From positions 186,001 through 250,000 of IMG/VR virus record IMGVR_UViG_3300042868_009074: DNA of 64,000 bases. One strand, given 5' to 3'. The translations under genes and the position numbers were made by a program. A model generated the notes under the pieces. That model saw only the letters and a list, made by a program, of their open reading frames with translations. It was not told the origin of the DNA and ran no database searches. Below, in pieces: positions 12,962 to 40,835 of the stretch. Position 1 is the first letter of the stretch, and each line of letters starts with the position of its first letter.

Positions 12962-13061
12962 TCTTCGGACTGCTCTGGTCCCTCACTTCCCCGTAAGGGG
13001 GGTGAGGGTTAAAGGAGTATATATCTTTAAATTATAGTATGCTCGTGAAAGGAGTATTATC

Positions 13062-13208
13062 ATGTTTACACTATTAACATCATTGTTCACTATCATCGGA
13101 TTCGCACTCACCAAGGGTGTATGGATCTTCGGTGCGTACACGCTCGTACGTAAGTACGACGTAGTGAACGTAATCAAGGCTCGCGTTCAGGACTCTTCGG
13201 AGTTCTGA
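13062..13208 (+). CDS. Cassette membrane peptide (48 aa)
   Basis: GAAAGGAG RBS; MFTLLTSLFTIIGFALTKGVWIFGAY... Confidence 0.7.
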   Translation: MFTLLTSLFTIIGFALTKGVWIFGAYTLVRKYDVVNVIKARVQDSSEF

Positions 13209-13402
13209 GCGTAAGCTAAGAAAAGGTATATATATTTAAATCTTATAGTGAGCAGCAATGCACACGTGTCGTTAGAGTTTGTATTTAGGAGGAACAATGT
13301 CAGCAACCGTTCAGGTCTAGAGTTGAGGTGTGTTGTTGTTTCAACAATGTTATATATCTTTAAATATTATAGTGTCTCTATTAGTACTTAGGAGGTACAG
13401 AC

Positions 13403-13597
13403 ATGTCATTATTCACACCACTATCACAGGCCGAGTTCGAGGCTGCGTGCGCTGCAAAGCGTGCGAAAGGCGTCCAAGCACGTCAGAAGAACAACGCTGC
13501 AGTCCAGGCTGTATCACAGCAGGTACGTATGCAGGTCATTGCTCCGGCAATGGGTTACATCACGACTCGTGACAAGAGCGTTCCAACAACCATCTAG
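13403..13597 (+). CDS. Cassette protein, 64 aa, copy 2
   Basis: AGGAGG RBS; paralogue of 12767-12961. Confidence 0.85.
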   Translation: MSLFTPLSQAEFEAACAAKRAKGVQARQKNNAAVQAVSQQVRMQVIAPAMGYITTRDKSVPTTI

Positions 13598-13717
13598 TCT
13601 TCGGACTACTCTGGTCCCTCACTTCCCCGTAAGGGGGGTGAGGGTTAAAGGAGTATATATCCTTTAAATCTTATAGTGACGCAAGGAAACCCAAGTACTT
13701 GTATCAGAAAGGTAAAC

Positions 13718-13969
13718 ATGTTTACATTAGCGCAAGTTGACGCACTCATCAACACGGCTATCAGCAAGGGCGATCTGCTCCACTACAACGGTGGTCAGGC
13801 TTACATCCGTTACGGTAACAACGTGATCATCATTGATCATGCTTGTCTTCCAGTAACAATGGAAGTCCACACCGGTGGATGGGCAGAGTCCTACATTGCA
13901 GAAAACCGTGGTGGTGGATACACTCACCACACGTCGCACTTGGCCGAGCTCCATCCGGAACTCGTCTAA
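13718..13969 (+). CDS. Cassette hypothetical protein
   Basis: GAAAGG RBS before MFTLAQVDALI; GCAA-tetraloop hairpin follows. Confidence 0.75.
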   Translation: MFTLAQVDALINTAISKGDLLHYNGGQAYIRYGNNVIIIDHACLPVTMEVHTGGWAESYIAENRGGGYTHHTSHLAELHPELV

Positions 13970-14057
13970 TCGCCAGCCTGTTCCCCCGCAAGGGGGACGG
14001 GCACCAAGGATTATAGTTCTTTAAATTATAGTATGAATTCCATGAAAGGGGATAAAC

Positions 14058-14162
14058 GTGAAGACTTTACGTTCTGCGTACTATGTTACGTACATCGTGT
14101 CAGCGATTCTTTCGTTCGTTGCTTTGGCTTTTGCCTACAAGCATCGCGACGAGATTCTCTGA
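14058..14162 (+). CDS. Cassette membrane peptide (34 aa)
   Basis: GAAAGGGG RBS, GTG start, one hydrophobic helix. Confidence 0.6.
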   Translation: MKTLRSAYYVTYIVSAILSFVALAFAYKHRDEIL

Positions 14163-14455
14163 CCAACCGCTCCGGCTGCCTCTCCCCCAGGCAAGTCGGG
14201 TAAGTCGGTTACTGTTATATATCTTTAGTTTATAGCCCACTATCACGGCTAGCCTATGTCCACATAGTGGGATAGGGTAGGCATAGTGATGTATATATGT
14301 ATGTATGTATTGTACATACCTTTAAATCATAGTATGAGCGATATGCAACTGGGTACCAGAGCTATCGTGGACTTGGTCTTTACTTCCCTTTTGGGAGGTA
14401 GAGACTACTGATTTATATATCTTTAAATTATAGTTTGCTCGTGAAAGGAGTTATT

Positions 14456-14617
14456 ATGTGGACATGTGGACACTGCACTAAGGAAATTGAAGACAAGTAT
14501 GATTACTGTGGATGGTGTGAATACTGTGGATGCACGTTGGATGATCATCGTTGCGTTTGCAAATGTGGTTCTACCGATGTGGAAGATCATGATTGCACTG
14601 GAGTTGGCTCAGCGTAA
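14456..14617 (+). CDS. Cassette Cys-rich peptide
   Basis: GAAAGGAG RBS; CGHC, CGWC, CGC, CVCKC. Confidence 0.7.
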   Translation: MWTCGHCTKEIEDKYDYCGWCEYCGCTLDDHRCVCKCGSTDVEDHDCTGVGSA

Positions 14618-14679
14618 GCTGGGTTAACTTCCCTGATTTATATACCTTTAAATTTCATAGAGAACTTAGGAGGTTCATT

Positions 14680-14850
14680 ATGGCTAAGAAAGCTATTATC
14701 TGTCGGCACTCTATCTGGTCGTTGATTAGCGACGATTCACGTCGTGCACTCATCACCCTCATCGAGGCTAACGTTGAGTTTGCTAATCGTCAGCTCAAGT
14801 TTGAGTTGGTTAATGGTCAGCTCAAGAAGGCCCCAGCGAAAGCTGGGTAA
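14680..14850 (+). CDS. Cassette hypothetical protein (56 aa)
   Basis: AGGAGG RBS; ends KKAPAKAG inside a hairpin. Confidence 0.75.
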   Translation: MAKKAIICRHSIWSLISDDSRRALITLIEANVEFANRQLKFELVNGQLKKAPAKAG

Positions 14851-14907
14851 CCTTCAACTATTTATATATCTTTAAATTATAGTATGTCCCTACAGAATGG
14901 AGATTAC

Positions 14908-15162
14908 ATGTATTACGTGTATCTACGACGTCGTATTGCGGTAGCAGTTGTACTGTTTATCGCCTTTATCCCAGTCATCAAGGTGCTCGTTCAAGAGCCA
15001 CCTGCCGATTGCGACCATGCATTGCATGTTGTTGCAAGAGGCGAGACTATTTGGTCAATCGCACATGCGCATTGCACCTCCGGTATCATCACCGCCATTG
15101 ATCAATTGGTAGATCAGTATGGTGGTGTTATCGATGTCGGTGACCGCATTCAGTTGCCTTGA
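14908..15162 (+). CDS. Membrane-anchored LysM-domain protein
   Basis: YLRRRIAVAVV TM segment, then HVVARGETIWSIA...IDVGDRIQLP. Confidence 0.8.
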   Translation: MYYVYLRRRIAVAVVLFIAFIPVIKVLVQEPPADCDHALHVVARGETIWSIAHAHCTSGIITAIDQLVDQYGGVIDVGDRIQLP

Positions 15163-15488
15163 CCAGGTCAAGTACACTCAGCCTTTTAGGTTGGGTGTAT
15201 TTGGCTATTGTATATATCTTTAAATCTTATAGTGGGAGAGATGGCACAGACAAGACTCATCCCGCTGCAGACGTGCAGTCCGGTTCGTCATGAACTGGGA
15301 TCTTGTTGGTAGTCACTGATCTTACCCGCTTAAGAGCGGTGCAGTGACTATTTACCTAATTGTTATATATCTTTAAATTATAGAGTGAGAAGCAATTGCA
15401 AACCGATGGGGCACTGGACTGCAGTGCATTGTTTCTTATTGTGTATATATCTTTAAATTTTATAGTGTGACTTGTGAAAGGAGTTATT

Positions 15489-15668
15489 ATGTCTAATGTA
15501 GACGAAGACGGACGTGGAGCATGTGTGAAATGTGGTCGTAATCAAGTATTGATTGATGAACTATGTGAAATGTGTGACAATGGGTTCACCCTAAAGGAAA
15601 TCAACATGTTTGAAACATGGTTGGCCGTTGGGGCACCCGGCGAGACCCCCTGGAGTAATCCAGGGTAA
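15489..15668 (+). CDS. Cassette zinc-finger peptide
   Basis: CVKC...CEMC; GAAAGGAG RBS. Confidence 0.7.
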   Translation: MSNVDEDGRGACVKCGRNQVLIDELCEMCDNGFTLKEINMFETWLAVGAPGETPWSNPG

Positions 15669-15764
15669 GTCCGTTGTATTTATACACCTTTAGTCCATAG
15701 TCCACTATCACGCGCAGGGTGATTATATATCTTTAAATACTTTAGTGAACTAAGGAGGTTCATT

Positions 15765-15920
15765 ATGTATTATGATTTTGACAAAGATGCTTGGTATTGT
15801 TCGACTTGTCACATCGATCTCAAGCAGATGGTTATTGACTATGACCCAGATTGTGGTGAATGCGAGTCTGCCATTTACACACTTCTGGTCAGTGGTGATC
15901 ACGACGTTTCGGCGTCGTGA
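15765..15920 (+). CDS. Cassette zinc-finger peptide (51 aa)
   Basis: AAGGAGG RBS; WYCSTC...DCGEC. Confidence 0.7.
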   Translation: MYYDFDKDAWYCSTCHIDLKQMVIDYDPDCGECESAIYTLLVSGDHDVSAS

Positions 15921-16111
15921 TTATCCACTTGTATATATCTTTTAAATTTTATAGTGAGTTGCCAACAAAACCAACCAGCGAAGTGGTTCTTCGGGTCTAG
16001 CACAGCACTAGGCGATAATGCAACTAAGATCTTCGGGAGTCATTCTCCCGAGGATCTATGCTGAAAGGTATATATCTTTAAATTATAGTTCGACTTTTGA
16101 AAGGAGTTATT

Positions 16112-16306
16112 ATGAGATTATTTATTATGCCAGATGGAAAAGGCGAAGGCGTCGATGCTGTGGTCTGTGAACGTTGTATTGAAAATGACTACGACATCAA
16201 CGAGAACAACGGTATGAGTGACCTTGAGCAGCAGCGCTACTTAAACGGGCTCGATGTTGCACCTGCTGCATCGTATTGTTGGTTGTGTGGAGTTGACTCG
16301 GCTTAG
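16112..16306 (+). CDS. Cassette zinc-finger peptide
   Basis: CERC...CWLC; GAAAGGAG RBS. Confidence 0.7.
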   Translation: MRLFIMPDGKGEGVDAVVCERCIENDYDINENNGMSDLEQQRYLNGLDVAPAASYCWLCGVDSA

Positions 16307-16372
16307 GCTGGGTTAACTCTCATGTCTTATATACCTTTAAATACTTATATGAACTCTTGAAAGGAGAACACA

Positions 16373-16606
16373 ATGAAGAATGCGATTTTATTCTTTCGTA
16401 ACATTGGCAATCCACACGGCATGGAATGGCGCAAGATTGGCTGTTTCAACATTTGGGCTTTTAGCGACTGGGCTGATTACGCAGGCTCTGGCTTGCATTG
16501 GAGCACCCATGACCGTTGCCTCGTGTTGAAAACATCCGCGAACAAGCGTAAATCTTGGAAGACCATTACACTTCTGCGTTTGCCCAAGGAAGGGACCTCA
16601 GCTTAG
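16373..16606 (+). CDS. Cassette hypothetical protein
   Basis: GAAAGGAG RBS; 77 aa. Confidence 0.7.
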   Translation: MKNAILFFRNIGNPHGMEWRKIGCFNIWAFSDWADYAGSGLHWSTHDRCLVLKTSANKRKSWKTITLLRLPKEGTSA

Positions 16607-16811
16607 GCTGAGGGACTTTTCCTTGTTTATATATCTTTAAATTTCATAGTGGTAGGCTGTACCGACGGCTATTCGATGGTCGGAGTAAATGGTGGGTCAA
16701 CACAGCGCAGGCTCCATCAGCTGGGTACCAGAAAGCTCAGAACGTTTATCGTTCTGGGTTTTTCTATTATTATATATCTTTAAATTTCATAGCGAACTAA
16801 GGAGGTTCAAC

Positions 16812-16970
16812 ATGTTTGTTACTAACTGTCCTCGTTGCGGGCAACTTGCGCCTGACTTTGAGAGTCCATCACATCAAGACGAATGGTGTTTTCATCATCG
16901 TTTGAATGGATTTGGCGAAGTCGTTGTTTCTGACGACGATTACCAGTCATCGGACGACGAGCCCTTTTAG
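16812..16970 (+). CDS. Cassette peptide with CPRC motif
   Basis: AAGGAGG RBS before MFVTNCPRCG. Confidence 0.7.
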   Translation: MFVTNCPRCGQLAPDFESPSHQDEWCFHHRLNGFGEVVVSDDDYQSSDDEPF

Positions 16971-17029
16971 GGTTCGTTGTTTGAGCTTTATATATCTTTA
17001 AATTTCATAGTGACCTAAGGAGGTTCATT

Positions 17030-17371
17030 ATGGCAACAACGCCATCCGTCACATCCCTACTATTACAACAGGAAGATTTGCAAACGCAAATTGATTCTGT
17101 TGACAGCAAGATTGCTGCGCTTCATCAGACCATGAAGGAGTGCGAGTCTCAAATCAACGCTTATGAGCAGGACCGTAAGCGTCTTGATTATTTGACTTGG
17201 GAGATTCAGAAGGCTTTGGCCAAGGCTGTCTGCCCTACTAACCAAGTTCTTCTTCGGTTCTCTAGTACTCTCAACGCTCTTCGGAATCCTGACCATCCGA
17301 GCTATGGAGCACTAGCGATTGACCAACGCTTTGCAGCCCTTGGCTTTACTCAGTCTTCTTCGGAAGGCTGA
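17030..17371 (+). CDS. Cassette coiled-coil protein
   Basis: AAGGAGG RBS; heptad pattern. Confidence 0.8.
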   Translation: MATTPSVTSLLLQQEDLQTQIDSVDSKIAALHQTMKECESQINAYEQDRKRLDYLTWEIQKALAKAVCPTNQVLLRFSSTLNALRNPDHPSYGALAIDQRFAALGFTQSSSEG

Positions 17372-17425
17372 GTTTAGCTGGATTATATATCTTTAAATTA
17401 TAGTGGGACGAAAGGAGTCATCATC

Positions 17426-17614
17426 ATGAATGACTGGGTAACACCAAAAATGGTGGACCAAGCTTTAGACTTTGCAGAACTACATCAACGTTCAAACAAG
17501 TTTTGTCGTGCAATGTTTCTGACCTTCAGGGCTAAGGGTAACTTGTCTGACAAGCAGGTTCTCAAGCTGTTGGAAATCAAAGCTGGTTACCGCCGCAGTG
17601 CTCGAGCTTCTTAG
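17426..17614 (+). CDS. Cassette hypothetical protein
   Basis: GAAAGGAG RBS; GNLSDKQV motif. Confidence 0.75.
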   Translation: MNDWVTPKMVDQALDFAELHQRSNKFCRAMFLTFRAKGNLSDKQVLKLLEIKAGYRRSARAS

Positions 17615-17867
17615 CTCGGGTTACTGTGGTCTTTATATATATCTTTAGCTTATAGTTGTCGTCCACTATCACGCGCCAGCTTGTATGCACATAGTGCTAT
17701 ACAGATGGTGTAGTGATTATACTGTGTGTATATCTTTAAATCTTATAGTGCCGACTGGAGTTGTAACAAGGACTGTCCGGGCACACAAGGATTGCATCTC
17801 TGACGAGAGATGTAGTCTTGTATCTATATAGATCTTTAAATGTCATAGTGTCCTTAGGAGGTACACT

Positions 17868-18020
17868 ATGTCCGCTATTTGCGCACGTTGTCGCTTGGAA
17901 AGCAACAACATCACACCACAGTCCATCGACCACATCCGTGGTCATTACGCAGCATTCCATGCTGCTTCGTCGAAGCCTCGCAAGGCTCGTGCGAAGAAGG
18001 CCCCAGCGAAAGCTGGGTGA
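17868..18020 (+). CDS. Cassette basic peptide (50 aa)
   Basis: AGGAGG RBS; MSAICARC...KKAPAKAG. Confidence 0.7.
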   Translation: MSAICARCRLESNNITPQSIDHIRGHYAAFHAASSKPRKARAKKAPAKAG

Positions 18021-18332
18021 CCTTCAACCGTTTATATGTCTTTAGTTTATATCTATAGTCTCACGTTTCAGGGATTGGAAACCAGTGAACTAAGTGAATA
18101 GTATGAGGAGTCCGCGAACGATTGTCCTACTGAACGCTGTAATAGTATCTTATATATGTTTATATATATGTTGGAGCAATGTCTTAGACTTGATCAGGCA
18201 TAGTTATTTTGCCGGCAAACAATTACGTCTATATTATTAATAGACATATATCTTAAGTTTTAATATTATATTATTCTAAATTTTCAAATAGGGACCCAAT
18301 CCGTGGGTTTCTTGTAGTAGTTTGGAGAAACT

Positions 18333-21843: not shown

Positions 21844-22038
21844 ATGTGGTATTGGTATCTTTCAGGTATGATTTCAGCTTTCTTGCTGGTATCTGCCGTA
21901 ATCAATGTAGGATTTGTGTTTGGTTTTATAACCTATACAAAATCTAAATCAAAATCATCCCAACTTACAGGAGCTGATAAAGCCCTGTATGATTGGGCCA
22001 AACAAGACATCACTGGTGAAACCCAAAGGAGTAACTAA
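21844..22038 (+). CDS. Small membrane protein
   Basis: AGGAG RBS; N-terminal TM helix. Confidence 0.65.
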   Translation: MWYWYLSGMISAFLLVSAVINVGFVFGFITYTKSKSKSSQLTGADKALYDWAKQDITGETQRSN

Positions 22039-22553
22039 TGTTATTATCTATGATGATTATCTTAGCAATTACATCGTGTGCTTTAGAGCTCATGATTGCT
22101 GCTAAGGTTCCAATCTGGCGTCAAATGTCAGCTAAATATCCATTGTTCAACCTACTAAACTCTCTTGTTATCTCATTCATAATGGGTATAGCATTTGGTG
22201 CAGCAGGTCTTGTAGCAATGGGTGCTGGTGTTATCTCAACTGTACTTTCAGTTCCAGGTTATCAGTTCCTTAAATGGAACTATGACACACCTCGTGCTCG
22301 TGCACACGGTGGAAGTGAATACAAATATCACCATGCTATCTTTAAGTCTAAACTAGAAAACTATAAAGTTACCCTCGCTAAATGGGGTGTAGCTTTGAAT
22401 GATCTAGGTAAACTTATGTATAGCTTTATCCGATTCCTTACTTTCCCTATCTGGATGACCCGCGACTTTATCGTATGGGTTCGTCCATATGTGGTTAAGT
22501 ATAACAACTATGTAGCTAGAAAACGTCTGGCTAAGATAAGGACAACACCATGA
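22038..22553 (+). CDS. Membrane protein
   Basis: AGGAG RBS; several hydrophobic helices. Confidence 0.75.
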   Translation: MLLSMMIILAITSCALELMIAAKVPIWRQMSAKYPLFNLLNSLVISFIMGIAFGAAGLVAMGAGVISTVLSVPGYQFLKWNYDTPRARAHGGSEYKYHHAIFKSKLENYKVTLAKWGVALNDLGKLMYSFIRFLTFPIWMTRDFIVWVRPYVVKYNNYVARKRLAKIRTTP

Positions 22554-23022: not shown

Positions 23023-24084
23023 ATGTCTATTCTAAATACACTTGTTAAGTCCTTCGACCCAGAAGGTTCACTTGGAATTGCAGTAGATTCACCCGAAATA
23101 CTGCAGTCCACACCAAAAACAGCTAACTTAATCCTTGGCCGTCGTGTTCCATTTCAGGCTTCCTTTAATGGCAACATGCTTCCTGGTTTCGTTACCTTAA
23201 AATCTGCAAATCTCCAGCGTCTTAGCGTTGAAGATCACACTTCTGCAAATGGCACAAAGCCATTAGTATCAGGTATCTTTAACAACGTTCAAATGGACGT
23301 AGAAGTAATGATTGGAACTGAAATTATTAGCCTTCAAGAACTTCTTCTTGCAATGTCTAATGCTTCAGCTCAAAACCAAGTTACATTGGAAGAATTCATG
23401 CCTACACTCGAAAGCCTTGGCTTCCGTTTCAACTCAGGTATGACCTTCTTCTGGCAACAGTTTGGCTCTAATATCGATAGCTACAACGAACTTCGTGACT
23501 CATTCAAGTCACTTGGTGCAGTAAGTGGTCTCGGTACTAAGAACTTGCCTGCTAAAGTTAAAGAAGTTTGGGAAATGCCAAAGAACCTTACTGGTCCTGC
23601 AATTGTAGGCTTTGAAGTTAGCCGTGCAAAGCGCGAAGAATCTAAGACAGGTCAAGGTTTCCTTGATTTCGTAGATGCCATTACAGCTAACTACAAGCGT
23701 ATTGTAGATCTTCGTAAGACTTCAGCAGCTATGAAGAACGATATCACTACAAACTCTGTTGTAGAAGCATGGTCTCCTGAGAAAATTAAAGCCGTTGAAG
23801 AGCATGCAAATGCTTTGATGCGCATTTCTCAGAACTGGTCAAGCGTTTGGTCTGGTTCTTCTCAAGGTAAAGTTATCGACGAGAAAGATCCTTCTGTTAT
23901 TGAACTTCAAGACCAGTGGTATGCAACCAAAGCTAACTGCGGACGTTTCTCTGTTGTCGTTAACGACAAAGTAATGCCAGTTGATCTTTGGACAAACTCA
24001 TTGCAAGCTAATACCTCAGGTAATACGACTGCATCTGCACCAGCTTCGGCTGTTGCTGGTGAAGCTCCAATTTCCTGGGAATAA
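23023..24084 (+). CDS. Hypothetical protein (353 aa) immediately upstream of the polymerase gene
   Basis: Long ORF with a low-complexity tail ending APISWE. Confidence 0.85.
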   Translation: MSILNTLVKSFDPEGSLGIAVDSPEILQSTPKTANLILGRRVPFQASFNGNMLPGFVTLKSANLQRLSVEDHTSANGTKPLVSGIFNNVQMDVEVMIGTEIISLQELLLAMSNASAQNQVTLEEFMPTLESLGFRFNSGMTFFWQQFGSNIDSYNELRDSFKSLGAVSGLGTKNLPAKVKEVWEMPKNLTGPAIVGFEVSRAKREESKTGQGFLDFVDAITANYKRIVDLRKTSAAMKNDITTNSVVEAWSPEKIKAVEEHANALMRISQNWSSVWSGSSQGKVIDEKDPSVIELQDQWYATKANCGRFSVVVNDKVMPVDLWTNSLQANTSGNTTASAPASAVAGEAPISWE

Positions 24085-24227
24085 GCAATCATCTAACTAA
24101 GCCCTACCGTAGGTGGGAGTATGCAGAAATGTATACTCCCACTTACACCCCCCATCATACTTTTTTATGTTTATGCAAAGACATACAAAAATATAATTAT
24201 AATTACACAATCTCTTAAGGAGGGATT

Positions 24228-26771
24228 TTGGCCATTAACCCCAAAACAAGAACTATCTGCTATGCTGATGGACCTATTCGCTCTACAGGTGGATATCAAG
24301 TAGGTTTCTACGATATATCTCACCTTCGCCAGGCATTACAATATTCTGGCGAATCATTCTATCGGGTAGGCTCTTTGCCTATCCCACAAAACGAACATGA
24401 ATTTACCCAAATTCAACAAATCATTAATGATCCTTCTATTCAGTATGCTCTAGTTGACAAGAACAAAATTGTTATCTGTCAAATTGGCAACAATACTGAA
24501 TGGCTTAGTATCTTTACTGATATGGGTTATACTGTCCACGGTGGAGGCAAGACTGCTAAGCGGTTGAAGACTCTCCATCGACCTACTTTAATCAATGCTC
24601 ACTTTGATCTTGATGAAATCAAAATACGCTATTGTGAAGCCGGCGACTTTAGTCGCTATTTCGATAGCGATGAAGAAGGCTATTGGCTTATAGATGCTGA
24701 AGACTATCAAGAATTTTATCAAAATCCTGAAGTTTGGGATCGACTCTTAGACGGTGGCTTTGCTATCCATCCACGATTGATCCATAAAGGTATTGATAAC
24801 CTACCTATCTTTGATCCCGCTGAAAACGAGGATCCAGGTGAGTACTATCTTAATCCTACTATGCGTATGGATTGCATCCGTAATCTATATAATGCTAAAG
24901 TATTTAATATTAGACTTACTGGACCAATGGGTCAGCTTAAAGGCAACTGCTTTGTTACCGATAAACTTCCTGAAGGTGTAGATGTATTGACTTGGCATGG
25001 AAATGTCAAGACAGAGATCTCATATTCTGAAGGCTATCAACTCATTGCTGAGCCTCAAGGACCTAAGTCCAAAGTCCGTACGGACGATCAAACTCTTATT
25101 AATATGCCACAACTCTTTACCAAGAGTGATATGGAATATTGGCTAGACGAGGAATATAAGAAACTCTTCAACGATGCCATCAACAATAAGCTTTTGATGA
25201 ACTGGAAGAATGTATACCAACGTTCTTTCCGTGATGATACTAACCTTGAAGATGAAGAGTCTTATGCACGGTTTCAATATCAAGGTTATCGCTGGAAAGC
25301 AATGGGGATGAAGGTAACTGATTCCCCTTGGTTATTCCAGACCCTTGCTACTAGCCATGCTAAACCCCTTCAAGAACGTATCCCAATCCCTTGTTCTGTA
25401 TCTGAACAGATTATTAGCGAGTCTATGGCTCGCTTATCTGGTTATGATGTAGAAGTCGAAGAAGGAACTATTCAACGCATCAATGACCTTGGTGTACACG
25501 TAGTTAATGATCTCGATTGGATTGAGATGTATGAGAGCCATGGTGGCTGCGACGGTGACGACTTCTTTGGTTTATTCTATAGGACTCCAGTTGGTGGACA
25601 ATATGATAAAGAAAAGGTTGTCTTTGCACGTCGATCTCCAAATGGTCTTGGTGAGTACTCTGTATTTAGATATGTAGAAGGACAATGGTCTCCAACTTGG
25701 TTGACCAGTGACGGTACTCAAGTTAAGTTTCCTGAGTGTTCTGGACGTGGTTGGCCTATGCGCCTATCTACCGCCATTCACGCAGGGAAAGTTAGCTATG
25801 TAGGACTTCCTTCTTCTACTGCTCCTAAAGCTGAACGTACTGAAACCTATACTAGACAAGATGTCTTTAATGATATCCGATCTAGTATGACAGGTGGAGG
25901 CGTTGGCGGTTTCGTCAATGCTGTAATGCTACATACTTCTGTGTTCCATTCTCATCGTCCACTTCAACTGTGTAGTTTGGAAGATGCAATCGACGGTTGC
26001 ACTCAGACAAACGAACCAGCTGACCGTGAAGCGATTGAGCTTGAAGCTAAAGTATTGGTTGATGAAGTTATTAGTTCTGGACTTCCAGTAGACCGTTCAT
26101 TATGGGATGCTAAGAAGTTTGACTACTATCTCAAGCCAGGCCAATTTGTAGAAAAGCACGAAGGTAAAATCACTCAGCTTAATATGATCACGAAAACTAA
26201 ATATCGTGAGTATGTAAAGATGATTACCGAATGGGCTCAAAAGAACTGTCAACCTGATGAAGTTATTCATAAGATTGGCTATCGCTTGAGCTTCAATGCT
26301 ATTCCTATCTTAAAACAATTCCGTAAAGATATTTACAACTTGAATCAATCAGACATGAATGAATCTAGTGGTTATCTTGACAGCAGTAGCTGGGACTTCC
26401 TGTATCAATCAATCGTTGATAAGATTGAACTACATGACAATGAGTCTGATCGACACGATCTAGTACTTGGTCTCTATTCTGCCAGCTTGAAGCACCCAAC
26501 TTCAAATGGTAAAGTAAGTGACCAAATCGTATTCAATCGACATGTCTTTCCGTTCCTTGAACGAGCACTCCAATATTATGGATTGGCTAACGTAGTTTCT
26601 TTCATTAGAAACAAAGATGGCACAGTCCGAGTAATGCAGAGCAAGACATCTGAATGGATTGGCATCGATGAAGATGGCAGTTATCATACCTTTGATGAAG
26701 CCATTGAATACCAAAGATTCCGTGGTAAGATTAGCCCTATTGTGTTTACCAACGCAAAGAAAACTGCTTAA
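24228..26771 (+). CDS. Single-subunit two-barrel (DPBB) RNA polymerase, QDE-1/YonO-like
   Basis: AAGGAGG RBS. Motifs LDGGFAI (DG.G.I), FNIR...LKG (fQiR...KG), HGGCDGDD (metal-binding loop), RRSPNGLGE (R.P....G[DE]), VGGFVNAVM (lG..aNa), DAIDG (AVD). Confidence 0.7.
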   Translation: MAINPKTRTICYADGPIRSTGGYQVGFYDISHLRQALQYSGESFYRVGSLPIPQNEHEFTQIQQIINDPSIQYALVDKNKIVICQIGNNTEWLSIFTDMGYTVHGGGKTAKRLKTLHRPTLINAHFDLDEIKIRYCEAGDFSRYFDSDEEGYWLIDAEDYQEFYQNPEVWDRLLDGGFAIHPRLIHKGIDNLPIFDPAENEDPGEYYLNPTMRMDCIRNLYNAKVFNIRLTGPMGQLKGNCFVTDKLPEGVDVLTWHGNVKTEISYSEGYQLIAEPQGPKSKVRTDDQTLINMPQLFTKSDMEYWLDEEYKKLFNDAINNKLLMNWKNVYQRSFRDDTNLEDEESYARFQYQGYRWKAMGMKVTDSPWLFQTLATSHAKPLQERIPIPCSVSEQIISESMARLSGYDVEVEEGTIQRINDLGVHVVNDLDWIEMYESHGGCDGDDFFGLFYRTPVGGQYDKEKVVFARRSPNGLGEYSVFRYVEGQWSPTWLTSDGTQVKFPECSGRGWPMRLSTAIHAGKVSYVGLPSSTAPKAERTETYTRQDVFNDIRSSMTGGGVGGFVNAVMLHTSVFHSHRPLQLCSLEDAIDGCTQTNEPADREAIELEAKVLVDEVISSGLPVDRSLWDAKKFDYYLKPGQFVEKHEGKITQLNMITKTKYREYVKMITEWAQKNCQPDEVIHKIGYRLSFNAIPILKQFRKDIYNLNQSDMNESSGYLDSSSWDFLYQSIVDKIELHDNESDRHDLVLGLYSASLKHPTSNGKVSDQIVFNRHVFPFLERALQYYGLANVVSFIRNKDGTVRVMQSKTSEWIGIDEDGSYHTFDEAIEYQRFRGKISPIVFTNAKKTA

Positions 26772-26780
26772 CAGTTTATG

Positions 26781-26827
26781 AACCCCCAGAGTATTAGCAC
26801 GTTGCTAGTATTCTGGGGGTTTTTTTT
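26781..26827 (+). terminator. Rho-independent terminator
   Basis: AACCCCCAGAGTATTAGCA/TGCTAGTATTCTGGGGGTT followed by a T-run. Confidence 0.85.
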
Positions 26828-27531: not shown

Positions 27532-27756
27532 ATGCAAAAGAGAAATAAAACTCAACTCATAACACAATACCTTGACCAGAACATTGGTAGTGAAGTTACT
27601 CCTCAGCAGATTGCTGATGCAGTAGAAACTACCATTCAAACAGTATACACTTTTATTCGTTCAAATGCATCACGCTTTGAGTCAGTTAAGCGTGGTACTT
27701 TTAAAATTAATTCCTCACAAAACACCCTCTTTTTAAATAACGAGGGTACTATATAG
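27532..27756 (+). CDS. Small winged-HTH DNA-binding protein
   Basis: VTPQQIADAVETTIQTVYTFI...VKRGTFK; GAAAGGA RBS. Confidence 0.7.
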   Translation: MQKRNKTQLITQYLDQNIGSEVTPQQIADAVETTIQTVYTFIRSNASRFESVKRGTFKINSSQNTLFLNNEGTI

Positions 27757-28336: not shown

Positions 28337-29212
28337 ATGCGCATACTACGAGTGATAATATTAATATTAACAATGCTAGTAACATCTGTTGTTGTTAGCT
28401 CTGCTGCTGGTGCAGCAACTGGAGGCGTCTCGGAGCTTTCTTCCGAGCCCCGAAGTACCACCCTACTCAGTACTCCTACTAAGTGGAAGTCCGTCGAATT
28501 TAAGATGGGACCTTCTATTAAGTACTGGACTAAAGTAGCCCAATGCGAGACTCGCCAGGACTGGCAAGACGGTGGCAACTGGGGTGGTGGACTTGGCATA
28601 GCTAAATCCACATGGCAAGGATATGGTGGCAAAGAGTTTGCATCTCATCCTTCCAAAGCGACTGTTCTTGAACAGATCGTAGTGGCTAACAGAATTGCAG
28701 TGTTTGGCTACCAAACAAAGAATGAGTTTATGACTGTCGAAGACAGAACTAATAACACACCATTCTTTAGACCAGCTGTTGGCTTTAATGGTTGGGGCTG
28801 TATTAAAAATAATACTTACCTCAAACCTAAAAAAGACACAGTTCTTAAAGTTAAACTTCCTGTAGGTAAAGAATTTTACTGTCCACAGTTTGAAGATACT
28901 TTTAAGAAGTATGCCCTGCCACACAAAGTGTTTTCTTATATCGCTTGGCGTGAATCTAGGTGTAATCCTGGAGCCGTCAATGCTAAATGGGAAAACGGGC
29001 ATATAGTCTGGACCCTCAACTCTAACGGTTCATACGACTCAGGTCTGCTCCAAATCAACTCTTCATGGTTTAAAACATTAAGAGAACAATTTGGTTATGC
29101 CCCTGACGATCTAATGACACCAGCAGTCAATGCTTTATTCGCCAGTTGGATTCTCCACTTCTCTAGTGGCAGACTTAGAAACTGGAATGTTAAAGCTACT
29201 TCTGTACGCTAG
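28337..29212 (+). CDS. Secreted dual lytic transglycosylase: Rpf-like domain plus SLT-like domain
   Basis: Signal peptide; WTKVAQCET...GGGLGIAKSTWQGYGG...ATVLEQIVVA (Rpf); IAWRESRCNPGAVN...DSGLLQINSSW (SLT). Confidence 0.85.
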   Translation: MRILRVIILILTMLVTSVVVSSAAGAATGGVSELSSEPRSTTLLSTPTKWKSVEFKMGPSIKYWTKVAQCETRQDWQDGGNWGGGLGIAKSTWQGYGGKEFASHPSKATVLEQIVVANRIAVFGYQTKNEFMTVEDRTNNTPFFRPAVGFNGWGCIKNNTYLKPKKDTVLKVKLPVGKEFYCPQFEDTFKKYALPHKVFSYIAWRESRCNPGAVNAKWENGHIVWTLNSNGSYDSGLLQINSSWFKTLREQFGYAPDDLMTPAVNALFASWILHFSSGRLRNWNVKATSVR

Positions 29213-29245: not shown

Positions 29246-29560
29246 ATGCAAAACACAAGAATCATTACCCTTAATCATAAGGATATCCCTATGCCTAAAA
29301 CTAACTACCTACCAGAAGAACTAGACTCTAAGTCTAAAATAAAAGAAATCATACTACAATACATTATCGATGCCAATGTAGAAGAGTATGAATACGACGA
29401 TGACGACGGCGACTGCTGTGACGATTGCTCGTATGAAGATGCTGACTGCAGCGACTGCTCATGTCATTCTGATTTTCCTGGCTACGATGAACATCTTGCT
29501 GCCCTACTAGTAAGATTCATCTATAATAACTTTAAACTTCAAGAAACACCTAATGAATAA
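29246..29560 (+). CDS. Acidic Cys-rich hypothetical protein
   Basis: DCCDDCSYEDADCSDCSCH. Confidence 0.6.
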   Translation: MQNTRIITLNHKDIPMPKTNYLPEELDSKSKIKEIILQYIIDANVEEYEYDDDDGDCCDDCSYEDADCSDCSCHSDFPGYDEHLAALLVRFIYNNFKLQETPNE

Positions 29561-30308
29561 TCAAATTAACTATGACCATGTTCACAATCAAGATCTAGCC
29601 CAATTAGATATTGAATCAGACACCCTTATGAGCGTAGATGTTGTGTCTATAATGTCACGCAAATTTAATTTTATTTCTCGTGGTTTTGATACTACAGAAA
29701 TGGAAAACCTTGTATCTTTCTATTATGACATAGAAGACACACGGATCTCGTTGCTAGATCTCAATGATTCTAAGAACTCATCTGTTTTTAAATCATATTC
29801 TCATTATCTAAGAGGATTAGAGAATTCTACTACTCCCATCTTTAGTGACTATAACCACTCCACTGTGACTGGTACCTGGGCTTTACAACAGCCTGGTATC
29901 GGACAAGCTGCCTCTGCTGCGTTGTTGTCTACGATAGATATTCACAAAGCTCCTAACTTTAATAACTTATGGAGCTATTGTGGTCTTAATCCAAGTACTG
30001 CTCAACCAGGATCTTGGAACCCATTCTTAAAGAATCTTACTTGGAAGATCGGCAAATCTTTTGCTACTGTTCCTGATTCCTTTTACGGTCAACTCTATAC
30101 TAAAGAGCTTGACCGTAGAATCAAACAACGAGATGATTCAGGTGCTGACACAGAAGACTCCAGGCTAGAAGCTCAAGCTCGACGCTATGCAACTAAGATC
30201 TTCTTGTCTCACTGGCATCAGATCCGATACATAGAAGTTATTGGACAAGAGCCATCATCTTCATTCAAAAATTCTAGTTACATTGCCCCACCTAATAATC
30301 CTTATTGA
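29553..30308 (+). CDS. IS110/Nop-domain-like protein without a nuclease domain (TasA-like)
   Basis: HhH PGIGQAASAALLSTID, LWSYCGLNP, WNPFLK, ARRYATKIFLSHW. No DEDD/RuvC N-terminus. Confidence 0.7.
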   Translation: MNNQINYDHVHNQDLAQLDIESDTLMSVDVVSIMSRKFNFISRGFDTTEMENLVSFYYDIEDTRISLLDLNDSKNSSVFKSYSHYLRGLENSTTPIFSDYNHSTVTGTWALQQPGIGQAASAALLSTIDIHKAPNFNNLWSYCGLNPSTAQPGSWNPFLKNLTWKIGKSFATVPDSFYGQLYTKELDRRIKQRDDSGADTEDSRLEAQARRYATKIFLSHWHQIRYIEVIGQEPSSSFKNSSYIAPPNNPY

Positions 30309-32630: not shown

Positions 32631-34310
32631 ATGACCGTTACCCTTAGACCCTACCAGCAAGAAGCTCTTGATGCTATCCTATTCCATGAAGGAAAAGGAA
32701 TTAGTAAACAACTTGTAGTACTCCCTACTGGTGCCGGTAAAACAGTTTTGTTTTCTCATCTACCAGTTATTCGCAAGAACACTCTACCTATGCTCGTTCT
32801 TGCACATCGTGCAGAGCTATTAGAGCAGGCCCGCAATAAGATCATGGCATCTAACCCTACACTTACTGTAGAGATAGAGCAAGCTGATCGTAAAGCTGGC
32901 CATGTAGACGTAGTGGTAGCTTCTGTAGCTACCTTAGGTCGTAGTGGCACACCCCGTATTGAAGGATATCCTAATGACTATTTTAAGTCTATCGTTATTG
33001 ACGAAGCCCACCATGCTGCTGCTCCTTCTTACAGAAGAATTGTTGATTACTTTAATCCTCCTTTTCTGTTGGGAGTTACGGCAACGCCGCAAAGGTCGGA
33101 TTCGGTTAGACTCATTGATGTTTTCGATGAGATAGTTTACTATAAATCAATACAAGATCTCATTGAAGATGGCTGGCTTAGTCCCCTCATCGGATATAGA
33201 GTTAAAACAAATGTAGACATATCAGATGTCGAAATTAGAAACGGTGAATATGCTCAAGATCAACTCGAAGAAAAAGTGGATACTCCTGAGCGCAACGCTT
33301 TTGTTGTCGCTACCTATCGCAATTTGGCAATGGCTACGAAAGCCATTGTATTCGCATCCGGCGTTCGACACGCCGAAAACCTGGCCTTATCCTTTCGACA
33401 AGCGTCGGTAGAATGCGAAGTAATCGTGGGGACAACTCCTCACGAAGAACGTCAAAAGATCCTTCAGGATTTTTCTACGAATAAACTTAAAGTAATTGTC
33501 AATGTAGGTGTTCTCACCGAAGGTTTTGATGAACCCTCATTGGAAACAATTATCTTAGCTAAACCAACCAGATCAACACTTCTGTATACTCAGATTGTTG
33601 GTCGAGGTACCCGTCTATTCGAAGGCAAAGAACATTGTACGATTATCGATATTGCAGACACCACGAGGGGGAAGAAGCCTATTGGCCTTCCTACTCTTTT
33701 GGGAATGCCACCAGAGTTCGATTTACAAGGACAGAGCCTAACAGACGTCGCTAAGAAGTATGAAGAGCTAGAAGACTATTGTCCTGGTGAAGCTATTCGT
33801 GTACTTAATCCAGATGATATTCAAGGTGCATACAAACGCATTAACTTGTTTATGCCACCACCACCAAACCCTGCTATCTTAGAATACTCTAAGTATGTAT
33901 GGGCAGAGATCGGTGAAAACTCTTACCACCTAGGTCTTAATAATAATGAGTCCATGCATATAACATTAGATGCTTTGGGTCGTTGGAATACTGAGCTTCA
34001 TTATAAAGATAATGATAAAACTTCAGTTAAGATTATTGGTAGAGCTGATAATCTTAGATCAGTATTTTCCGGCACTGACAAATGGATTCAAGAGAATCGT
34101 GCAGCATCTTTAGTTCTAATCGATTCTTCTGCTCAATGGAGAACTGATGGACCTACTGATCCTCAAAAGAAAATGTTAAAGCGTTTAGGTATACCCCTTA
34201 CTGCTGACATGACTAAAGGTATGGCTTCTCAAATCATATCTAAGTATTACGAAAACAATCCTAAGCCTAAATGGCTTCAAAATAAGATTGAATCTAAAAA
34301 ACGTTGGTAG
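32631..34310 (+). CDS. SF2 DExH helicase (ResIII/Irc3-like)
   Basis: LRPYQ, PTGAGKT, DEAHH, TATP, LTEGFDEP, QIVGRGTR. Confidence 0.93.
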   Translation: MTVTLRPYQQEALDAILFHEGKGISKQLVVLPTGAGKTVLFSHLPVIRKNTLPMLVLAHRAELLEQARNKIMASNPTLTVEIEQADRKAGHVDVVVASVATLGRSGTPRIEGYPNDYFKSIVIDEAHHAAAPSYRRIVDYFNPPFLLGVTATPQRSDSVRLIDVFDEIVYYKSIQDLIEDGWLSPLIGYRVKTNVDISDVEIRNGEYAQDQLEEKVDTPERNAFVVATYRNLAMATKAIVFASGVRHAENLALSFRQASVECEVIVGTTPHEERQKILQDFSTNKLKVIVNVGVLTEGFDEPSLETIILAKPTRSTLLYTQIVGRGTRLFEGKEHCTIIDIADTTRGKKPIGLPTLLGMPPEFDLQGQSLTDVAKKYEELEDYCPGEAIRVLNPDDIQGAYKRINLFMPPPPNPAILEYSKYVWAEIGENSYHLGLNNNESMHITLDALGRWNTELHYKDNDKTSVKIIGRADNLRSVFSGTDKWIQENRAASLVLIDSSAQWRTDGPTDPQKKMLKRLGIPLTADMTKGMASQIISKYYENNPKPKWLQNKIESKKRW

Positions 34311-34336
34311 TCAATACCACCTACGGAAACTATTCT

Positions 34337-36731: not shown

Positions 36732-36815
36732 GCCCGAGTGGCGGAATAGGCAGACGCAGGGGGCTTAAACCCCCCGGAGGGCAACCTCTTACCGGTTCAA
36801 GTCCGGTCTCGGGTA
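36732..36815 (+). tRNA. tRNA-Leu(TAA)
   Basis: Acceptor GCCCGAG/CTCGGGT, anticodon loop CTTAAAC, long variable arm, GTTCAAGTC. Confidence 0.92.
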
Positions 36816-40833: not shown

Positions 40834-40835
40834 CT

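What the first reader, a model, noticed from the sequence alone, without database searches (positions are those of the whole stretch)
24228..26771. QDE-1/YonO-like single-subunit RNA polymerase with a variant, apparently permuted catalytic barrel
Seen: motifs DGGFAI, FNIR-x7-KG, GGCDGDD, RRSPNGLGE, VGGFVNA and DAIDG. Known: in cellular RdRP/YonO-type two-barrel enzymes the order is DG.G, R...KG, [RK].P...G[DE], DxDGD, G...N, AVD. Here the Asp loop is DGDD instead of DxDGD, and it comes before the R.P motif rather than after it. Inference: a circularly permuted DPBB and a distinct polymerase subfamily. It is the obvious candidate reader of the repeated cassette motif 6-11 kb upstream, although it could instead transcribe late genes, as YonO does.
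Basis: partly seen in the sequence, partly recalled or inferred. Interest (0 to 1): 0.82.

Follow-up and report, generated by a model that had tools for sequence, protein, structure and literature searches.

The report
Phage RNA polymerase with rewired catalytic barrel
A roughly 200-kb lake-water phage encodes an unannotated single-chain enzyme with the fold of cellular-type ("two-barrel") RNA polymerases, but its metal-binding loop is DxDD instead of DxDxD and lies before, not after, the conserved Arg-x-Pro loop, defining a large undescribed polymerase family.

Summary
ORF 24228-26771 (+, 847 aa, TTG start behind AAGGAGG) contains all six motifs in the stated order. Pfam, PHROGs, NCBIfam, PDB sequences and GenBank phages give no match. 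It nevertheless heads a large family: 398 clusters at 50% identity. K111, K238, D442, D444, D445, R469 and P471 are invariant in 124 diverse members.

An AlphaFold model (pLDDT 86.8) matches only two-barrel RNA polymerases in the PDB: QDE-1, Arabidopsis RDR2 and the Thermus-phage non-virion polymerase. So a QDE-1/YonO-class polymerase is supported at fold level. Membership of the YonO/RdRP sequence family (PF05183) is not.

The Asp loop really is DxDD and really precedes R-x-P, family-wide. The catalytic barrel modelled alone (pLDDT 94) matches no known double-psi barrel. Coevolution places the Asp-loop strand beside the R-x-P hairpin. The barrel is therefore rewired. A plain circular permutation fits worst, and the exact topology needs coordinates I could not see.

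The gene lies on the early/middle arm, not the structural arm. Whether it reads the 24-copy AT-rich cassette motif is unproven. The 353-aa neighbour is not a conserved partner; a 171-aa membrane protein and a RadD/XPB-like helicase are.

The parts
24228..26771 (+). Gene for the 847-aa single-subunit two-barrel polymerase (TTG start)
   Evidence: AF2 pLDDT 86.8; Foldseek hits to QDE-1, RDR2 and gp64
24182..24189 (+). CATACAAA, 46 nt upstream of the start. A [TC]CATACAAA element sits about 45-55 nt upstream of the RNAP gene in relatives L033, L017 and L011. Candidate promoter element of the gene itself, distinct from the cassette motif.
24217..24223 (+). Shine-Dalgarno AAGGAGG
24549..24581 (+). 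Helix K108-T-A-K111-R112-L-K..H-R118 (K111 100%, R112 96%, K108 90% conserved). Probable counterpart of the 'duplex-binding helix' that precedes barrel B in QDE-1 and gp64.
   Evidence: comparison with the supplement text of PMC10770324. Inference.
24579..25067 (+). Barrel B (beta-subunit-like), aa about 118-280
   Evidence: DSSP strands; DCA contacts R118-N227, F178-I228, I228-C241, N240-Q277, T120-I273. Weak DPBB-protein hits appear for the whole model only.
24750..24755 (+). D175-G176 (98% and 99% conserved), counterpart of YonO D249-G250 and Rpb2 D837
24903..24944 (+). F-N-I-R229 ... K238-G239 (R 86%, K 100%, G 87% conserved), counterpart of YonO F263-M-x-R266..K271-G272 and Rpb2 R983..K987-G
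25377..25697 (+). Barrel A (catalytic), aa 384-490. Strands 390-397, 414-418, 423-426, 446-455, 464-469, 477-486; helices 398-403 and 428-437. Non-canonical connectivity.
   Evidence: pLDDT 94.1 when modelled alone; no DPBB hit; DCA
25539..25562 (+). Metal-binding loop H-G-G-C-D442-G-D444-D445 (D-x-D-D, 100% conserved)
25629..25655 (+). R-R469-S-P471-N-G-L-G475-E476 hairpin loop (R and P 100%, G 89%, E 86% conserved), placed after the Asp loop
   Evidence: Best local profile alignment is to YonO L-R492-S-P494..E499. DCA contacts G440-E476 and H438-S478.
25902..25922 (+). V-G560-G-F-V-N564-A (G 94%, N 86% conserved), collinear with YonO I-G593-E-I-S-N597
25980..25994 (+). E585-D-A-I-D589 (E 83%, D 95% conserved), collinear with YonO I-D625-Y-A-K. 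N-to-D spacing is 25 here and 28 in YonO.
26780..26822 (+). Intrinsic-terminator-like hairpin (20 pairs) plus T-run, ending the RNAP transcription unit
22038..22553 (+). 171-aa membrane protein, the best-conserved upstream neighbour of the RNAP gene (40 of 41 related loci; under 300 nt away in 22)
23023..24084 (+). 353-aa protein of unknown function. Present in 32 of 41 related loci, at a median 7 kb upstream and never within 300 nt of the RNAP gene (within 1 kb only in the 62%-identity relatives L004/L036). Not a conserved adjacent partner.
27532..27756 (+). 74-aa HTH-like protein (weak Sigma70_r3 and HTH_20 hits, E about 0.07). Present in 32 of 41 loci and always preceded by the TATATAYCTTTATAT motif. 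Candidate transcription factor.
32631..34310 (+). RadD/XPB/type-I-R-like SF2 helicase, downstream of the RNAP gene in 39 of 41 loci (median 1.5 kb)
13018..18165 (+). Early-cassette region. 24 copies of TATATATCTTTAAAT(N0-3)[TC]ATAG[TC], all on the + strand. Each follows a hairpin and precedes an AGGAG site and a small ORF. Candidate phage-specific promoters.
   Evidence: (13 found against 0.19 expected)

Best explanation
The ORF encodes the phage's own single-polypeptide nucleotidyl transferase of the two-barrel superfamily, the fold of cellular RNAP beta/beta-prime, eukaryotic RdRPs/QDE-1, YonO, and the crAss and P23-45 phage RNAPs. It is most likely a DNA-dependent RNA polymerase.

Shown: the fold class; the family-wide invariance of a D-x-D-D loop, an R-x-P hairpin, a D-G and an R...K-G motif; and the inverted order of the first two relative to every described family.

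Inferred mechanism. Barrel B supplies D175 and the basic residues R229, K238 and K261. Barrel A supplies the three carboxylates (D442, D444, D445) for the catalytic Mg2+ and the Arg (R469) that contacts the incoming NTP in canonical enzymes. These meet at the barrel interface as in canonical enzymes. Barrel A reaches that geometry with a different chain path: the strand after the Asp loop is joined by a hairpin directly to the strand that ends in R-x-P. In canonical barrels these two strands are also neighbours but lie far apart in sequence.

Inferred biology. The enzyme is a non-virion protein made from the early/middle arm of a roughly 200-kb tailed lake phage, and it transcribes phage genes from phage-specific promoters. 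The AT-rich cassette motif is one candidate set and later genes are the other. It possibly works with the conserved 74-aa HTH protein and the RadD/XPB-like helicase.
For: Fold. The AF2 model has pLDDT 86.8 and pTM 0.85. All six PDB hits with E<=1e-3 are two-barrel RNAPs: QDE-1 5.7e-8, RDR2 1.8e-6, P32 gp64 and P74 gp62 2e-5 to 9e-5. The next hit is at E=0.2. In the protein atlas, 67 of the 100 nearest clusters fall in the set whose members partly carry PF05183 (15% in the example shown) and 11 more in sets where 96-100% do; all ten best family-bearing hits share that family or clan.

Catalytic residues. The eight residues common to all two-barrel RNAPs are three Asp, R and P in barrel A, plus one Asp and two basic residues in barrel B (PMC2919709). 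All have 86-100% conserved counterparts here.

Collinearity. Motif order matches YonO except for one local swap. The best local profile-profile alignment pairs our R469-S-P..E476 with YonO R492-S-P..E499.

Rewired barrel. Barrel A alone has pLDDT 94.1 yet finds no DPBB (best E 1.8). The weak DPBB-protein hits of the whole model (FMD subunit D, p97-N) are absent, so they must come from barrel B. DCA ladder scores are e-f 5.46, d-e 4.33, a-b 4.11, c-d 4.06, a-d 3.6, b-c 3.43 and b-f 3.35. Contacts G440-E476 and H438-S478 put the Asp loop next to the R-x-P loop.

Phage context. A portal and a Peptidase_S74 tail fibre lie on the opposite arm. The window has 4 tRNAs. Related contigs are 170-210 kb and come from lake metagenomes.

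Precedents. YonO and P23-45 gp64 are non-virion enzymes of this fold that transcribe phage genes.
Against: No sequence-level link to any characterised polymerase was found. PF05183 is absent from the window protein and from 54 diverse members. hhalign against the YonO family gives 0.4% probability, and the R-S-P local alignment has only P=0.057.

The Asp spacing (i, i+2, i+3) is unprecedented for this superfamily, so catalytic competence is assumed, not shown. I could not inspect model coordinates. The barrel-A topology therefore rests on DSSP, on DCA with Meff of about 125, and on a negative Foldseek result. Re-ordering the alignment columns into canonical order did not raise the YonO profile score.

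Template (DNA or RNA), product (RNA or DNA) and promoter specificity are all untested. No RNA-seq run holding this phage was listed.
Confidence: 0.72

Rival explanations
1. There is no permutation. RSPNG.GE corresponds to the conserved segment that follows the Asp loop in canonical enzymes: E. coli beta-prime 'ILSPANGEP' and Rpb1 'IVSPQSNKP' (both recalled from memory), and YonO R555..P562..E566. The canonical pre-Asp R-x-P was lost and its Arg function moved. The barrel looks odd only because of insertions.
For: YonO has invariant R555, P562 and E566 16-27 residues after its Asp triad, a similar distance to ours (24). The letter pattern S-P-x-N-G-E resembles ours. Re-ordering the columns did not improve the profile match to YonO.
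Against: hhalign pairs our segment with YonO's pre-Asp R492-S-P494..E499, not with 555-566. In ours the Asp-loop strand is joined to the R-x-P strand by a plain hairpin with no intervening helix. No R-x-P remnant is conserved before the Asp loop. An invariant Arg directly before x-P is the hallmark of the canonical motif. A canonical barrel should have found DPBB folds, and it did not.
Confidence: 0.25
2. One reading: the enzyme is delivered with the virion, or is otherwise present at time zero. It reads the 24 AT-rich cassette promoters (13.0-18.2 kb), driving early transcription independently of the host.
For: The motif is a contiguous block of about 23 nt found 13 times where 0.19 are expected. 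It is strictly + strand and confined to the cassettes. It is not picked up as a -35/-10 promoter, whereas TTGACA/TATAAT-like sites are visible in other intergenic stretches, read by eye. A variant precedes the HTH74 gene in about 25 relatives whose RNAPs are only about 50% identical, and the closest relatives use a diverged version. The P23-45 virion RNAP reads exactly such a conserved AT-rich pre-early motif.
Against: The gene lies on the early/middle arm, about 12 kb from the divergence point and away from the portal and tail-fibre arm. It has a different conserved upstream element, CATACAAA. No evidence of virion packaging could be obtained. The motif contains a TANNNT-type hexamer (TATAGT) at a sensible distance from the SD, so a host sigma factor is not excluded. 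In L004 and L039 a cassette-like motif precedes the TM171-RNAP operon, which would demand a pre-existing polymerase.
Confidence: 0.3
3. The T7/YonO/gp64-like scheme. The host RNAP, or another injected enzyme encoded outside the window, reads the cassettes and the RNAP gene. This enzyme then transcribes middle or late genes, for example the leftward structural arm, from another promoter class.
For: The gene's position next to the early region, with its own upstream motif and a strong terminator. Precedents are YonO for late genes and gp64 for early and middle genes. The conserved neighbours are an HTH protein and an XPB/RadD-like helicase rather than structural proteins.
Against: No repeated late-promoter motif was found in the 64-kb window. 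The leftward arm appears to start behind a TTGACA-type site. Only 64 kb plus 20 kb of a roughly 200-kb genome was seen.
Confidence: 0.4
4. It is a polymerase of the fold but not a transcriptase. It could be a replicative primase, a PolD-like DNA polymerase, or an RNA-dependent RNA polymerase used in host-phage conflict.
For: QDE-1 and RDRs copy RNA, and PolD copies DNA with the same fold. The Asp loop C-D-G-D-D resembles P. abyssi PolD 'C-D-G-D-E-D' (supplement text). No primase or DNA polymerase gene was recognised in the window. Jumbo-phage RNAPs have been proposed as primases.
Against: R469 is invariant, and its canonical counterpart reads the NTP ribose (established knowledge for beta-prime R425). 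Every characterised phage enzyme of this fold is a transcriptase. Most of the genome was not examined.
Confidence: 0.1

Closest known systems
[quoted passage not shown]
   Same: These are the best structural matches (E 5.7e-8 and 1.8e-6) and the nearest protein-language-model neighbours. Both are single chains with barrel B before barrel A. The D-G, R..K-G, [RK]-x-P...G-[DE], G...N and A-[IV]-D motifs are all present.
   Different: There is no PF05183 hit. The metal loop is DxDD, not DxDGD. The Asp loop precedes R-x-P. Barrel A is not superposable as a canonical DPBB. The setting is a phage, not eukaryotic silencing.
YonO of Bacillus phage SPbeta (single-subunit DNA-dependent RNAP for late genes)
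   Same: Similar size (839 against 847 aa), phage-encoded, and the same motif set with near-identical local patterns: F-x-x-R-L..K-G, R-S-P....E, and G...N followed 25-28 residues later by D. The best local profile alignment is R-S-P to R-S-P.
   Different: hhalign probability is 0.4%. YonO has the canonical order (R492-S-P, then D535-N-D-G-D539) and many of its homologues hit PF05183. YonO has a C-terminal Cys4 cluster that is absent here.
Thermus phage P23-45 gp64 / P74-26 gp62 non-virion RNAP
   Same: Structural hits at E 2e-5 to 9e-5. It is a minimal phage single-chain two-barrel RNAP with almost no sequence similarity to others, encoded among early genes and reading a phage-specific promoter.
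   Different: gp64 is about 590 aa and carries a canonical DxDxD. No sequence similarity was found.
crAss-like phage virion RNAP (phi14:2 gp66)
   Same: Same superfamily. A crAss-like phage protein segment appears weakly in BFVD (E 4.4e-3, prob 0.35).
   Different: gp66 is a protein of more than 2,000 aa packaged in the virion with a DFDxD motif (abstract). It is not among the significant PDB hits here.
Archaeal PolD DP2 catalytic barrel
   Same: The Asp loop reads C-D-G-D-E-D in P. abyssi PolD and C-D-G-D-D here.
   Different: PolD is a DNA polymerase with a different architecture. It was not hit by Foldseek or by sequence search.

Membership tests
Two-barrel (DPBB) polymerase superfamily | Overall fold: two beta-barrels with connector, helical and clamp elements, resembling solved members | tested here: met
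   Foldseek of the pLDDT-86.8 model: all six hits with E<=1e-3 are QDE-1, RDR2 and gp64/gp62, each with probability 0.99-1.00.
Two-barrel (DPBB) polymerase superfamily | The eight universally conserved active-site residues (3 Asp, R and P in barrel A; Asp and 2 basic residues in barrel B; PMC2919709) | tested here: met
   D442, D444, D445, R469 and P471 are 100% conserved, D175 98%, K238 100%, R229 86% and K261 96% in 124 members. Residue identity is met; order and spacing are not (see the next rows).
Two-barrel (DPBB) polymerase superfamily | Metal-A signature DxDxD | tested here: not met
   D-x-D-D is invariant and no member has DxDxD at this site. All 23 described families are said to share DxDxD.
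Two-barrel (DPBB) polymerase superfamily | R-x-P lies N-terminal to the Asp loop (beta3-RxP-beta4-beta5-alpha2-Asp-beta6) | tested here: not met
   The Asp loop at 442-445 precedes R469-x-P471 in all 124 members. No conserved R-x-P lies before it.
Two-barrel (DPBB) polymerase superfamily | Catalytic barrel has canonical double-psi connectivity (ring order b3-b4-b2-b5-b1-b6, PMC11258233) | tested here: inconclusive
   Barrel A alone (pLDDT 94.1) finds no DPBB, best E 1.8. DCA supports a closed sheet with d-e-f matching b6-b3-b4, but two ring orders fit about equally.
Two-barrel (DPBB) polymerase superfamily | Template-dependent nucleotidyl transfer | not testable with these tools
   Needs biochemistry.
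RdRP / YonO family (Pfam PF05183) | Match to the PF05183 profile | tested here: not met
   No hit at E<=1 for the window protein and none at E<=0.01 in 54 diverse members. Many YonO homologues do hit it.
RdRP / YonO family (Pfam PF05183) | Profile-profile similarity to the YonO family | tested here: not met
   hhalign of A3 against A2 gives probability 0.4%. The catalytic halves give 1%, P=0.057.
Virion-packaged phage RNAP (N4, crAss, phiKZ vRNAP, P23-45 gp96) | Protein present in virions, or gene within the structural/late module | tested here: not met
   The gene lies on the rightward early/middle arm. The portal and tail fibre lie on the leftward arm. Actual virion content is not testable here.

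The most novel reading that the evidence does not exclude
The catalytic barrel of a working RNA polymerase has been naturally rewired. The two-strand module carrying R-x-P (beta3-beta4) and the module carrying the Asp loop (beta5-alpha-beta6) have changed places, and the metal loop has shortened to DxDD, while the active-site geometry is kept. This would be the first topological isomer of the universal RNAP active-site barrel. It occurs in a family of several hundred phage lineages that signature searches based on DxDxD and on Pfam have missed. In these freshwater jumbo phages it would run a host-independent transcription programme from the conserved AT-rich promoter.
Probability: 0.35. Interest if true: 0.88.

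Novelty: new variant of a known kind. Interest (0 to 1): 0.78.

Why it matters
The double-psi barrel pair with its DxDxD loop is regarded as the invariant core of all cellular transcription and of its viral and RNAi relatives. New viral RNAPs have been found by looking for that signature.

A large, well-conserved phage family that keeps the catalytic residues but changes both the Asp spacing and the chain order would matter in several ways:
- It would show that the core tolerates rewiring.
- It would give a natural test case for how the barrel evolved. Engineered interconversions of DPBB, RIFT, OB and SH3 folds are already a research topic (PMC11258233).
- It would reveal a transcription system, present in abundant lake phages, that current annotation pipelines miss entirely.
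- It would offer a compact 847-aa polymerase with a possibly simple promoter of about 23 nt.

Tried and rejected
- Sequence searches of the 847-aa protein found nothing: Pfam, PHROGs, NCBIfam, PDB sequences (single protein and profile) and tblastn against 50,697 GenBank phages.
- hhalign against a 20-member YonO family alignment gave no significant similarity.
- 'Un-permuting' test. I moved alignment columns 458-488 in front of 412-457 and re-ran hhalign against the YonO catalytic half. The score did not rise (16.3 against 18.3), so this gave no positive support for a simple module swap.
- Strict circular permutation (3-4-5-6-1-2) leaves the strongest coupling (strands 464-469 with 477-486) unexplained. 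It also requires two pairings that have the lowest ladder scores, so I rate it least likely.
- A paralogue in the window (a possible second, virion polymerase) was not found. hmmsearch with the family profile hits only this ORF. The second copy on IMG/VR contig 3300042868_009074 sits in a fully syntenic block, so it looks like a second phage joined in assembly.
- The 353-aa protein as cofactor: no family, poor predicted structure, not syntenic.
- RNA evidence: no RNA run was listed. Laying contigs of 4 DNA runs on 9.8-15.7 kb showed only assembly breaks at the 279-nt repeat and no genome terminus.
- Host: only 3 hits in 185,579 species genomes, on short MAG contigs from three phyla, which is uninformative.
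- TRF did not detect the 37-nt array seen in relatives.
- The literature library holds no description of a DxDD or permuted two-barrel polymerase.
Full report
**The object.** ORF 24228-26771 on the + strand encodes 847 aa. It starts at TTG, 4 nt after AAGGAGG (24217-24223). It ends 8 nt before a 20-bp hairpin with a T-run at 26780-26822.

**No annotation, but a large family.** The protein hits nothing in Pfam, PHROGs or NCBIfam, nothing among PDB sequences (as a single sequence or as a profile), and nothing in GenBank phage records. It nevertheless has 237 homologues of 798-860 aa in the 90%-clustered collection; the 120 listed are unnamed or called 'hypothetical protein'. A profile search of 1.84 billion representatives found 398 clusters at E<=1e-3, 266 at E<=1e-10 and 114 at E<=1e-30, with lengths around 750-1,565 aa. 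None of 54 diverse members hits any polymerase Pfam family. In BFVD the relatives are 'Uncharacterized protein [uncultured Caudovirales phage]'.

**Conservation.** I aligned 124 members of at least 700 aa, down to about 20% identity. K111, K238, D442, D444, D445, R469 and P471 are 100% conserved. R112, D175, G176, K261, G439 and D589 are at least 95% conserved. G235, G475, E476, G560, N564 and R229 are 86-94% conserved. The Asp loop is H-G-G-x-D-x-D-D in every member. It lies 18-24 residues before R-[SN]-P-N-x-x-G-E-Y. No R-x-P is conserved upstream of it.

**Fold.** AlphaFold2 with a 45-sequence alignment gave pLDDT 86.8 and pTM 0.85. Foldseek against the PDB returned exactly six hits with E<=1e-3:
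- QDE-1 (5.7e-8)
- Arabidopsis RDR2 (1.8e-6, TM 0.39)
- both chains of Thermus-phage P32 gp64 and both of P74 gp62 (2e-5 to 9e-5)

The next hits, at E 0.2-1, are small double-psi-barrel proteins: formylmethanofuran dehydrogenase subunit D and AAA-ATPase N-domains. That these are DPBB folds is my own knowledge. The protein-language-model atlas places the protein among unnamed clusters and clusters carrying PF05183 RdRP, including plant and animal RDRs at 0.88-0.89.

[quoted passage not shown] I fetched YonO from SPbeta and aligned it with 19 homologues. It shows D249-G250, F263-M-x-R266..K271-G272, R492-S-P494..E499, D535-N-D537-G-D539, G593...N597 and D625. Our protein has the same elements with similar local patterns. 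The downstream spacing is nearly identical: N564 to D589 is 25 residues, against 28 in YonO. The one difference is that the Asp loop and the R-x-P loop have changed places. In addition, the Asp spacing is i, i+2, i+3. An upstream K108-x-x-K111-R112 helix resembles the 'duplex-binding helix' aligned ahead of barrel B in QDE-1 and gp64 (supplement text); this is inference. At sequence level the link is invisible: hhalign of our family against the YonO family gives 0.4%.

**Is barrel A permuted?** I could not read model coordinates, so I used three indirect tests.

1. *Barrel A modelled alone.* Residues 380-540 with a 104-sequence alignment gave pLDDT 94.1. This confident domain finds nothing in the PDB. 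The best E is 1.8 and TM is at most 0.24. The few RNAP beta-prime chains appear at E 4-6. None of the DPBB proteins seen with the whole model appear. So the canonical-looking barrel is barrel B, and barrel A cannot be superposed in sequence order on known DPBBs.

2. *Coevolution.* I ran mean-field DCA on 246 sequences (Meff about 127). The strands are labelled a 390-397, b 414-418, c 423-426, d 446-455 (the strand after the Asp loop), e 464-469 (ending in R-x-P) and f 477-486. The summed ladder scores are:

   | Strand pair | Score | Orientation |
   |---|---|---|
   | e-f | 5.46 | antiparallel |
   | d-e | 4.33 | antiparallel |
   | a-b | 4.11 | |
   | c-d | 4.06 | |
   | a-d | 3.6 | |
   | b-c | 3.43 | |
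   | b-f | 3.35 | |
   | c-e | 1.72 | |
   | c-f | 1.87 | |

   Contacts G440-E476 and H438-S478 join the two catalytic loops. The canonical ring order is b3-b4-b2-b5-b1-b6 (Yagi and Tagami 2024). In it the strand after the Asp loop (b6) pairs with the strand ending in R-x-P (b3), which pairs with b4. That is exactly our d-e-f sheet, but here d is joined to e by a hairpin. Two ring orders fit about equally (e-f-b-c-a-d and e-f-b-a-c-d). The first corresponds to sequence order 1-2-5-6-3-4, a swap of the b3-b4 and b5-alpha-b6 modules. A strict circular permutation (3-4-5-6-1-2) needs c-e and c-f pairings, which score lowest. It also leaves e-f unexplained.

3. *Local profile comparison.* The best local alignment between our catalytic half and YonO's pairs R469-S-P..E476 with YonO's pre-Asp R492-S-P..E499, not with its post-Asp R555..P562..E566. 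The statistic is weak (P=0.057). Moving our columns into canonical order did not raise the score.

My reading: the inversion of motif order is a fact. Non-canonical connectivity of barrel A is likely, at about 0.6. Its exact form is open. A no-permutation rival, in which RSPNG.GE equals the 'SP.NGEP' segment that follows the Asp loop in beta-prime (recalled from memory), keeps about 0.25.

**Genomic setting.** The window is identical to parts of two IMG/VR contigs of 104 and 268 kb. 41 further loci carry homologues at 46-64% identity, on contigs reaching 170-210 kb. The DNA is found in at least 20 lake-water metagenome runs. The region at 12.3-12.7 kb is a divergence point. Leftward (minus strand) lie RecA (itself on the plus strand), a ClpB-like ATPase and a 1,214-aa protein. 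Just beyond the window lie a Peptidase_S74 tail fibre and a portal. Rightward lie the cassettes, then the RNAP block, then helicase, subtilase, P450, tRNAs, JAB/ThiF, SSB and UDG. So this is a tailed jumbo-class phage, and the polymerase gene sits on the early/middle arm.

**Conserved neighbours across 41 loci.**
- The 171-aa membrane protein is upstream in 40 loci and adjacent in 22.
- A RadD/XPB/type-I-R-like SF2 helicase is downstream in 39 loci, at a median 1.5 kb. A Rad25-like ATPase neighbourhood is already noted for jumbo-phage RNAPs.
- A 74-aa HTH-like protein is present in 32 loci.
- The 353-aa protein is present in 32 loci but at a median 7 kb away and never within 300 nt of the RNAP gene; it comes within 1 kb only in the 62%-identity relatives L004/L036. 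It has no family and a poor predicted structure.

**The cassette motif.** TATATATCTTTAAAT(N0-3)[TC]ATAG[TC] occurs 24 times, only on the + strand and only between 13,018 and 18,165. Each copy follows a hairpin and lies about 10-25 nt before AGGAG and a small, poorly conserved ORF. A stricter pattern gave 13 hits against 0.19 expected. The sigma-70 scan does not pick these up. Other intergenic stretches, read by eye, contain TTGACA/TATAAT-like sites, for example before the leftward arm. A variant, TATATAYCTTTATAT, precedes the HTH74 gene here (27470) and in about 25 relatives whose polymerases are only about 50% identical. The closest relatives (62-64% identity) use a diverged TTATATAAAT-type cassette motif. 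This behaviour fits a phage-specified promoter, as with the AT-rich pre-early motif of the P23-45 virion RNAP.

The polymerase gene itself sits behind a different conserved element: CATACAAA at 24182, and TCATACAAA about 55 nt upstream in L033, L017 and L011. No evidence on virion content or transcripts could be obtained. I therefore rate 'reads the cassettes' at about 0.3 and 'made early, reads later promoters' at about 0.4. The remainder goes to other roles.

**Verdict.** The protein founds a large, undescribed family within the two-barrel polymerase superfamily. It works like YonO or QDE-1 by fold and catalytic residues. It fails the sequence-family test for PF05183/YonO and two defining order and spacing features of the superfamily's active site. 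I found no description of such an enzyme in the held literature.

Noticed in passing
window 29553-30308 (+); L006 9372-9890; L017 13705-14412: The 251-aa protein matches NCBIfam 'TIGR-Tas system RNA-guided endonuclease' (E 5e-26, 92 bits against a cut-off of 100) and the IS110 C-terminal domain. Homologues occur in 25 of 41 related loci. Two relatives carry, next to the RNAP gene, a roughly 37-nt periodic array of two conserved blocks (AATGAATCA and ATTAGTAACA) separated by variable stretches of 7 and about 10 nt. It looks like a TIGR guide array. No such array is in the window.
   Followed up: partly
IMG/VR contig 3300042868_009074 (L003 and L005): This 268-kb contig holds two fully syntenic copies of the TM171-RNAP-helicase-subtilase block, one at 100% and one at 53% RNAP identity. 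It is probably two related phages joined in assembly rather than paralogues in one genome.
   Followed up: partly
window 14198-14247, 15663-15712, 17618-17667: There are three copies of a cassette-motif variant (…CTTTAGNNTATAG) followed by the conserved CCACTATCACG and no obvious ORF. They may be small RNAs driven by the same promoter type.
   Followed up: no
window 12753-13031 and 13389-13667: A 279-nt direct repeat (86% identity) lies at the start of the cassette region. Public assemblies break here in all four runs examined.
   Followed up: partly
window 47451-51907: A JAB-domain protein, a ThiF/E1-like protein and an AAA ATPase lie in a row, a ubiquitin-like conjugation/deconjugation gene set in a phage. 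A possible proteasome-like gene (faint Pfam hit) lies about 1.5 kb beyond the window's right end (L047 11895-12512).
   Followed up: no
window 37337-38569; 34304-35917; 28337-29212: The phage encodes a cytochrome P450, a subtilase, and a secreted Rpf-like plus SLT double transglycosylase. The Rpf-like domain and strong AGGAG ribosome-binding sites hint at a Gram-positive or actinobacterial host, but the host is unknown. Only three MAG contigs from three phyla carry relatives.
   Followed up: partly
window 36732-36816, 39871-39944, 40760-40834, 59545-59619: There are four tRNA genes (Leu-taa, Lys-ttt, Met-cat, Arg-tct). Another tRNA-like stretch at about 42540-42580 was not called by ARAGORN.
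   Followed up: no
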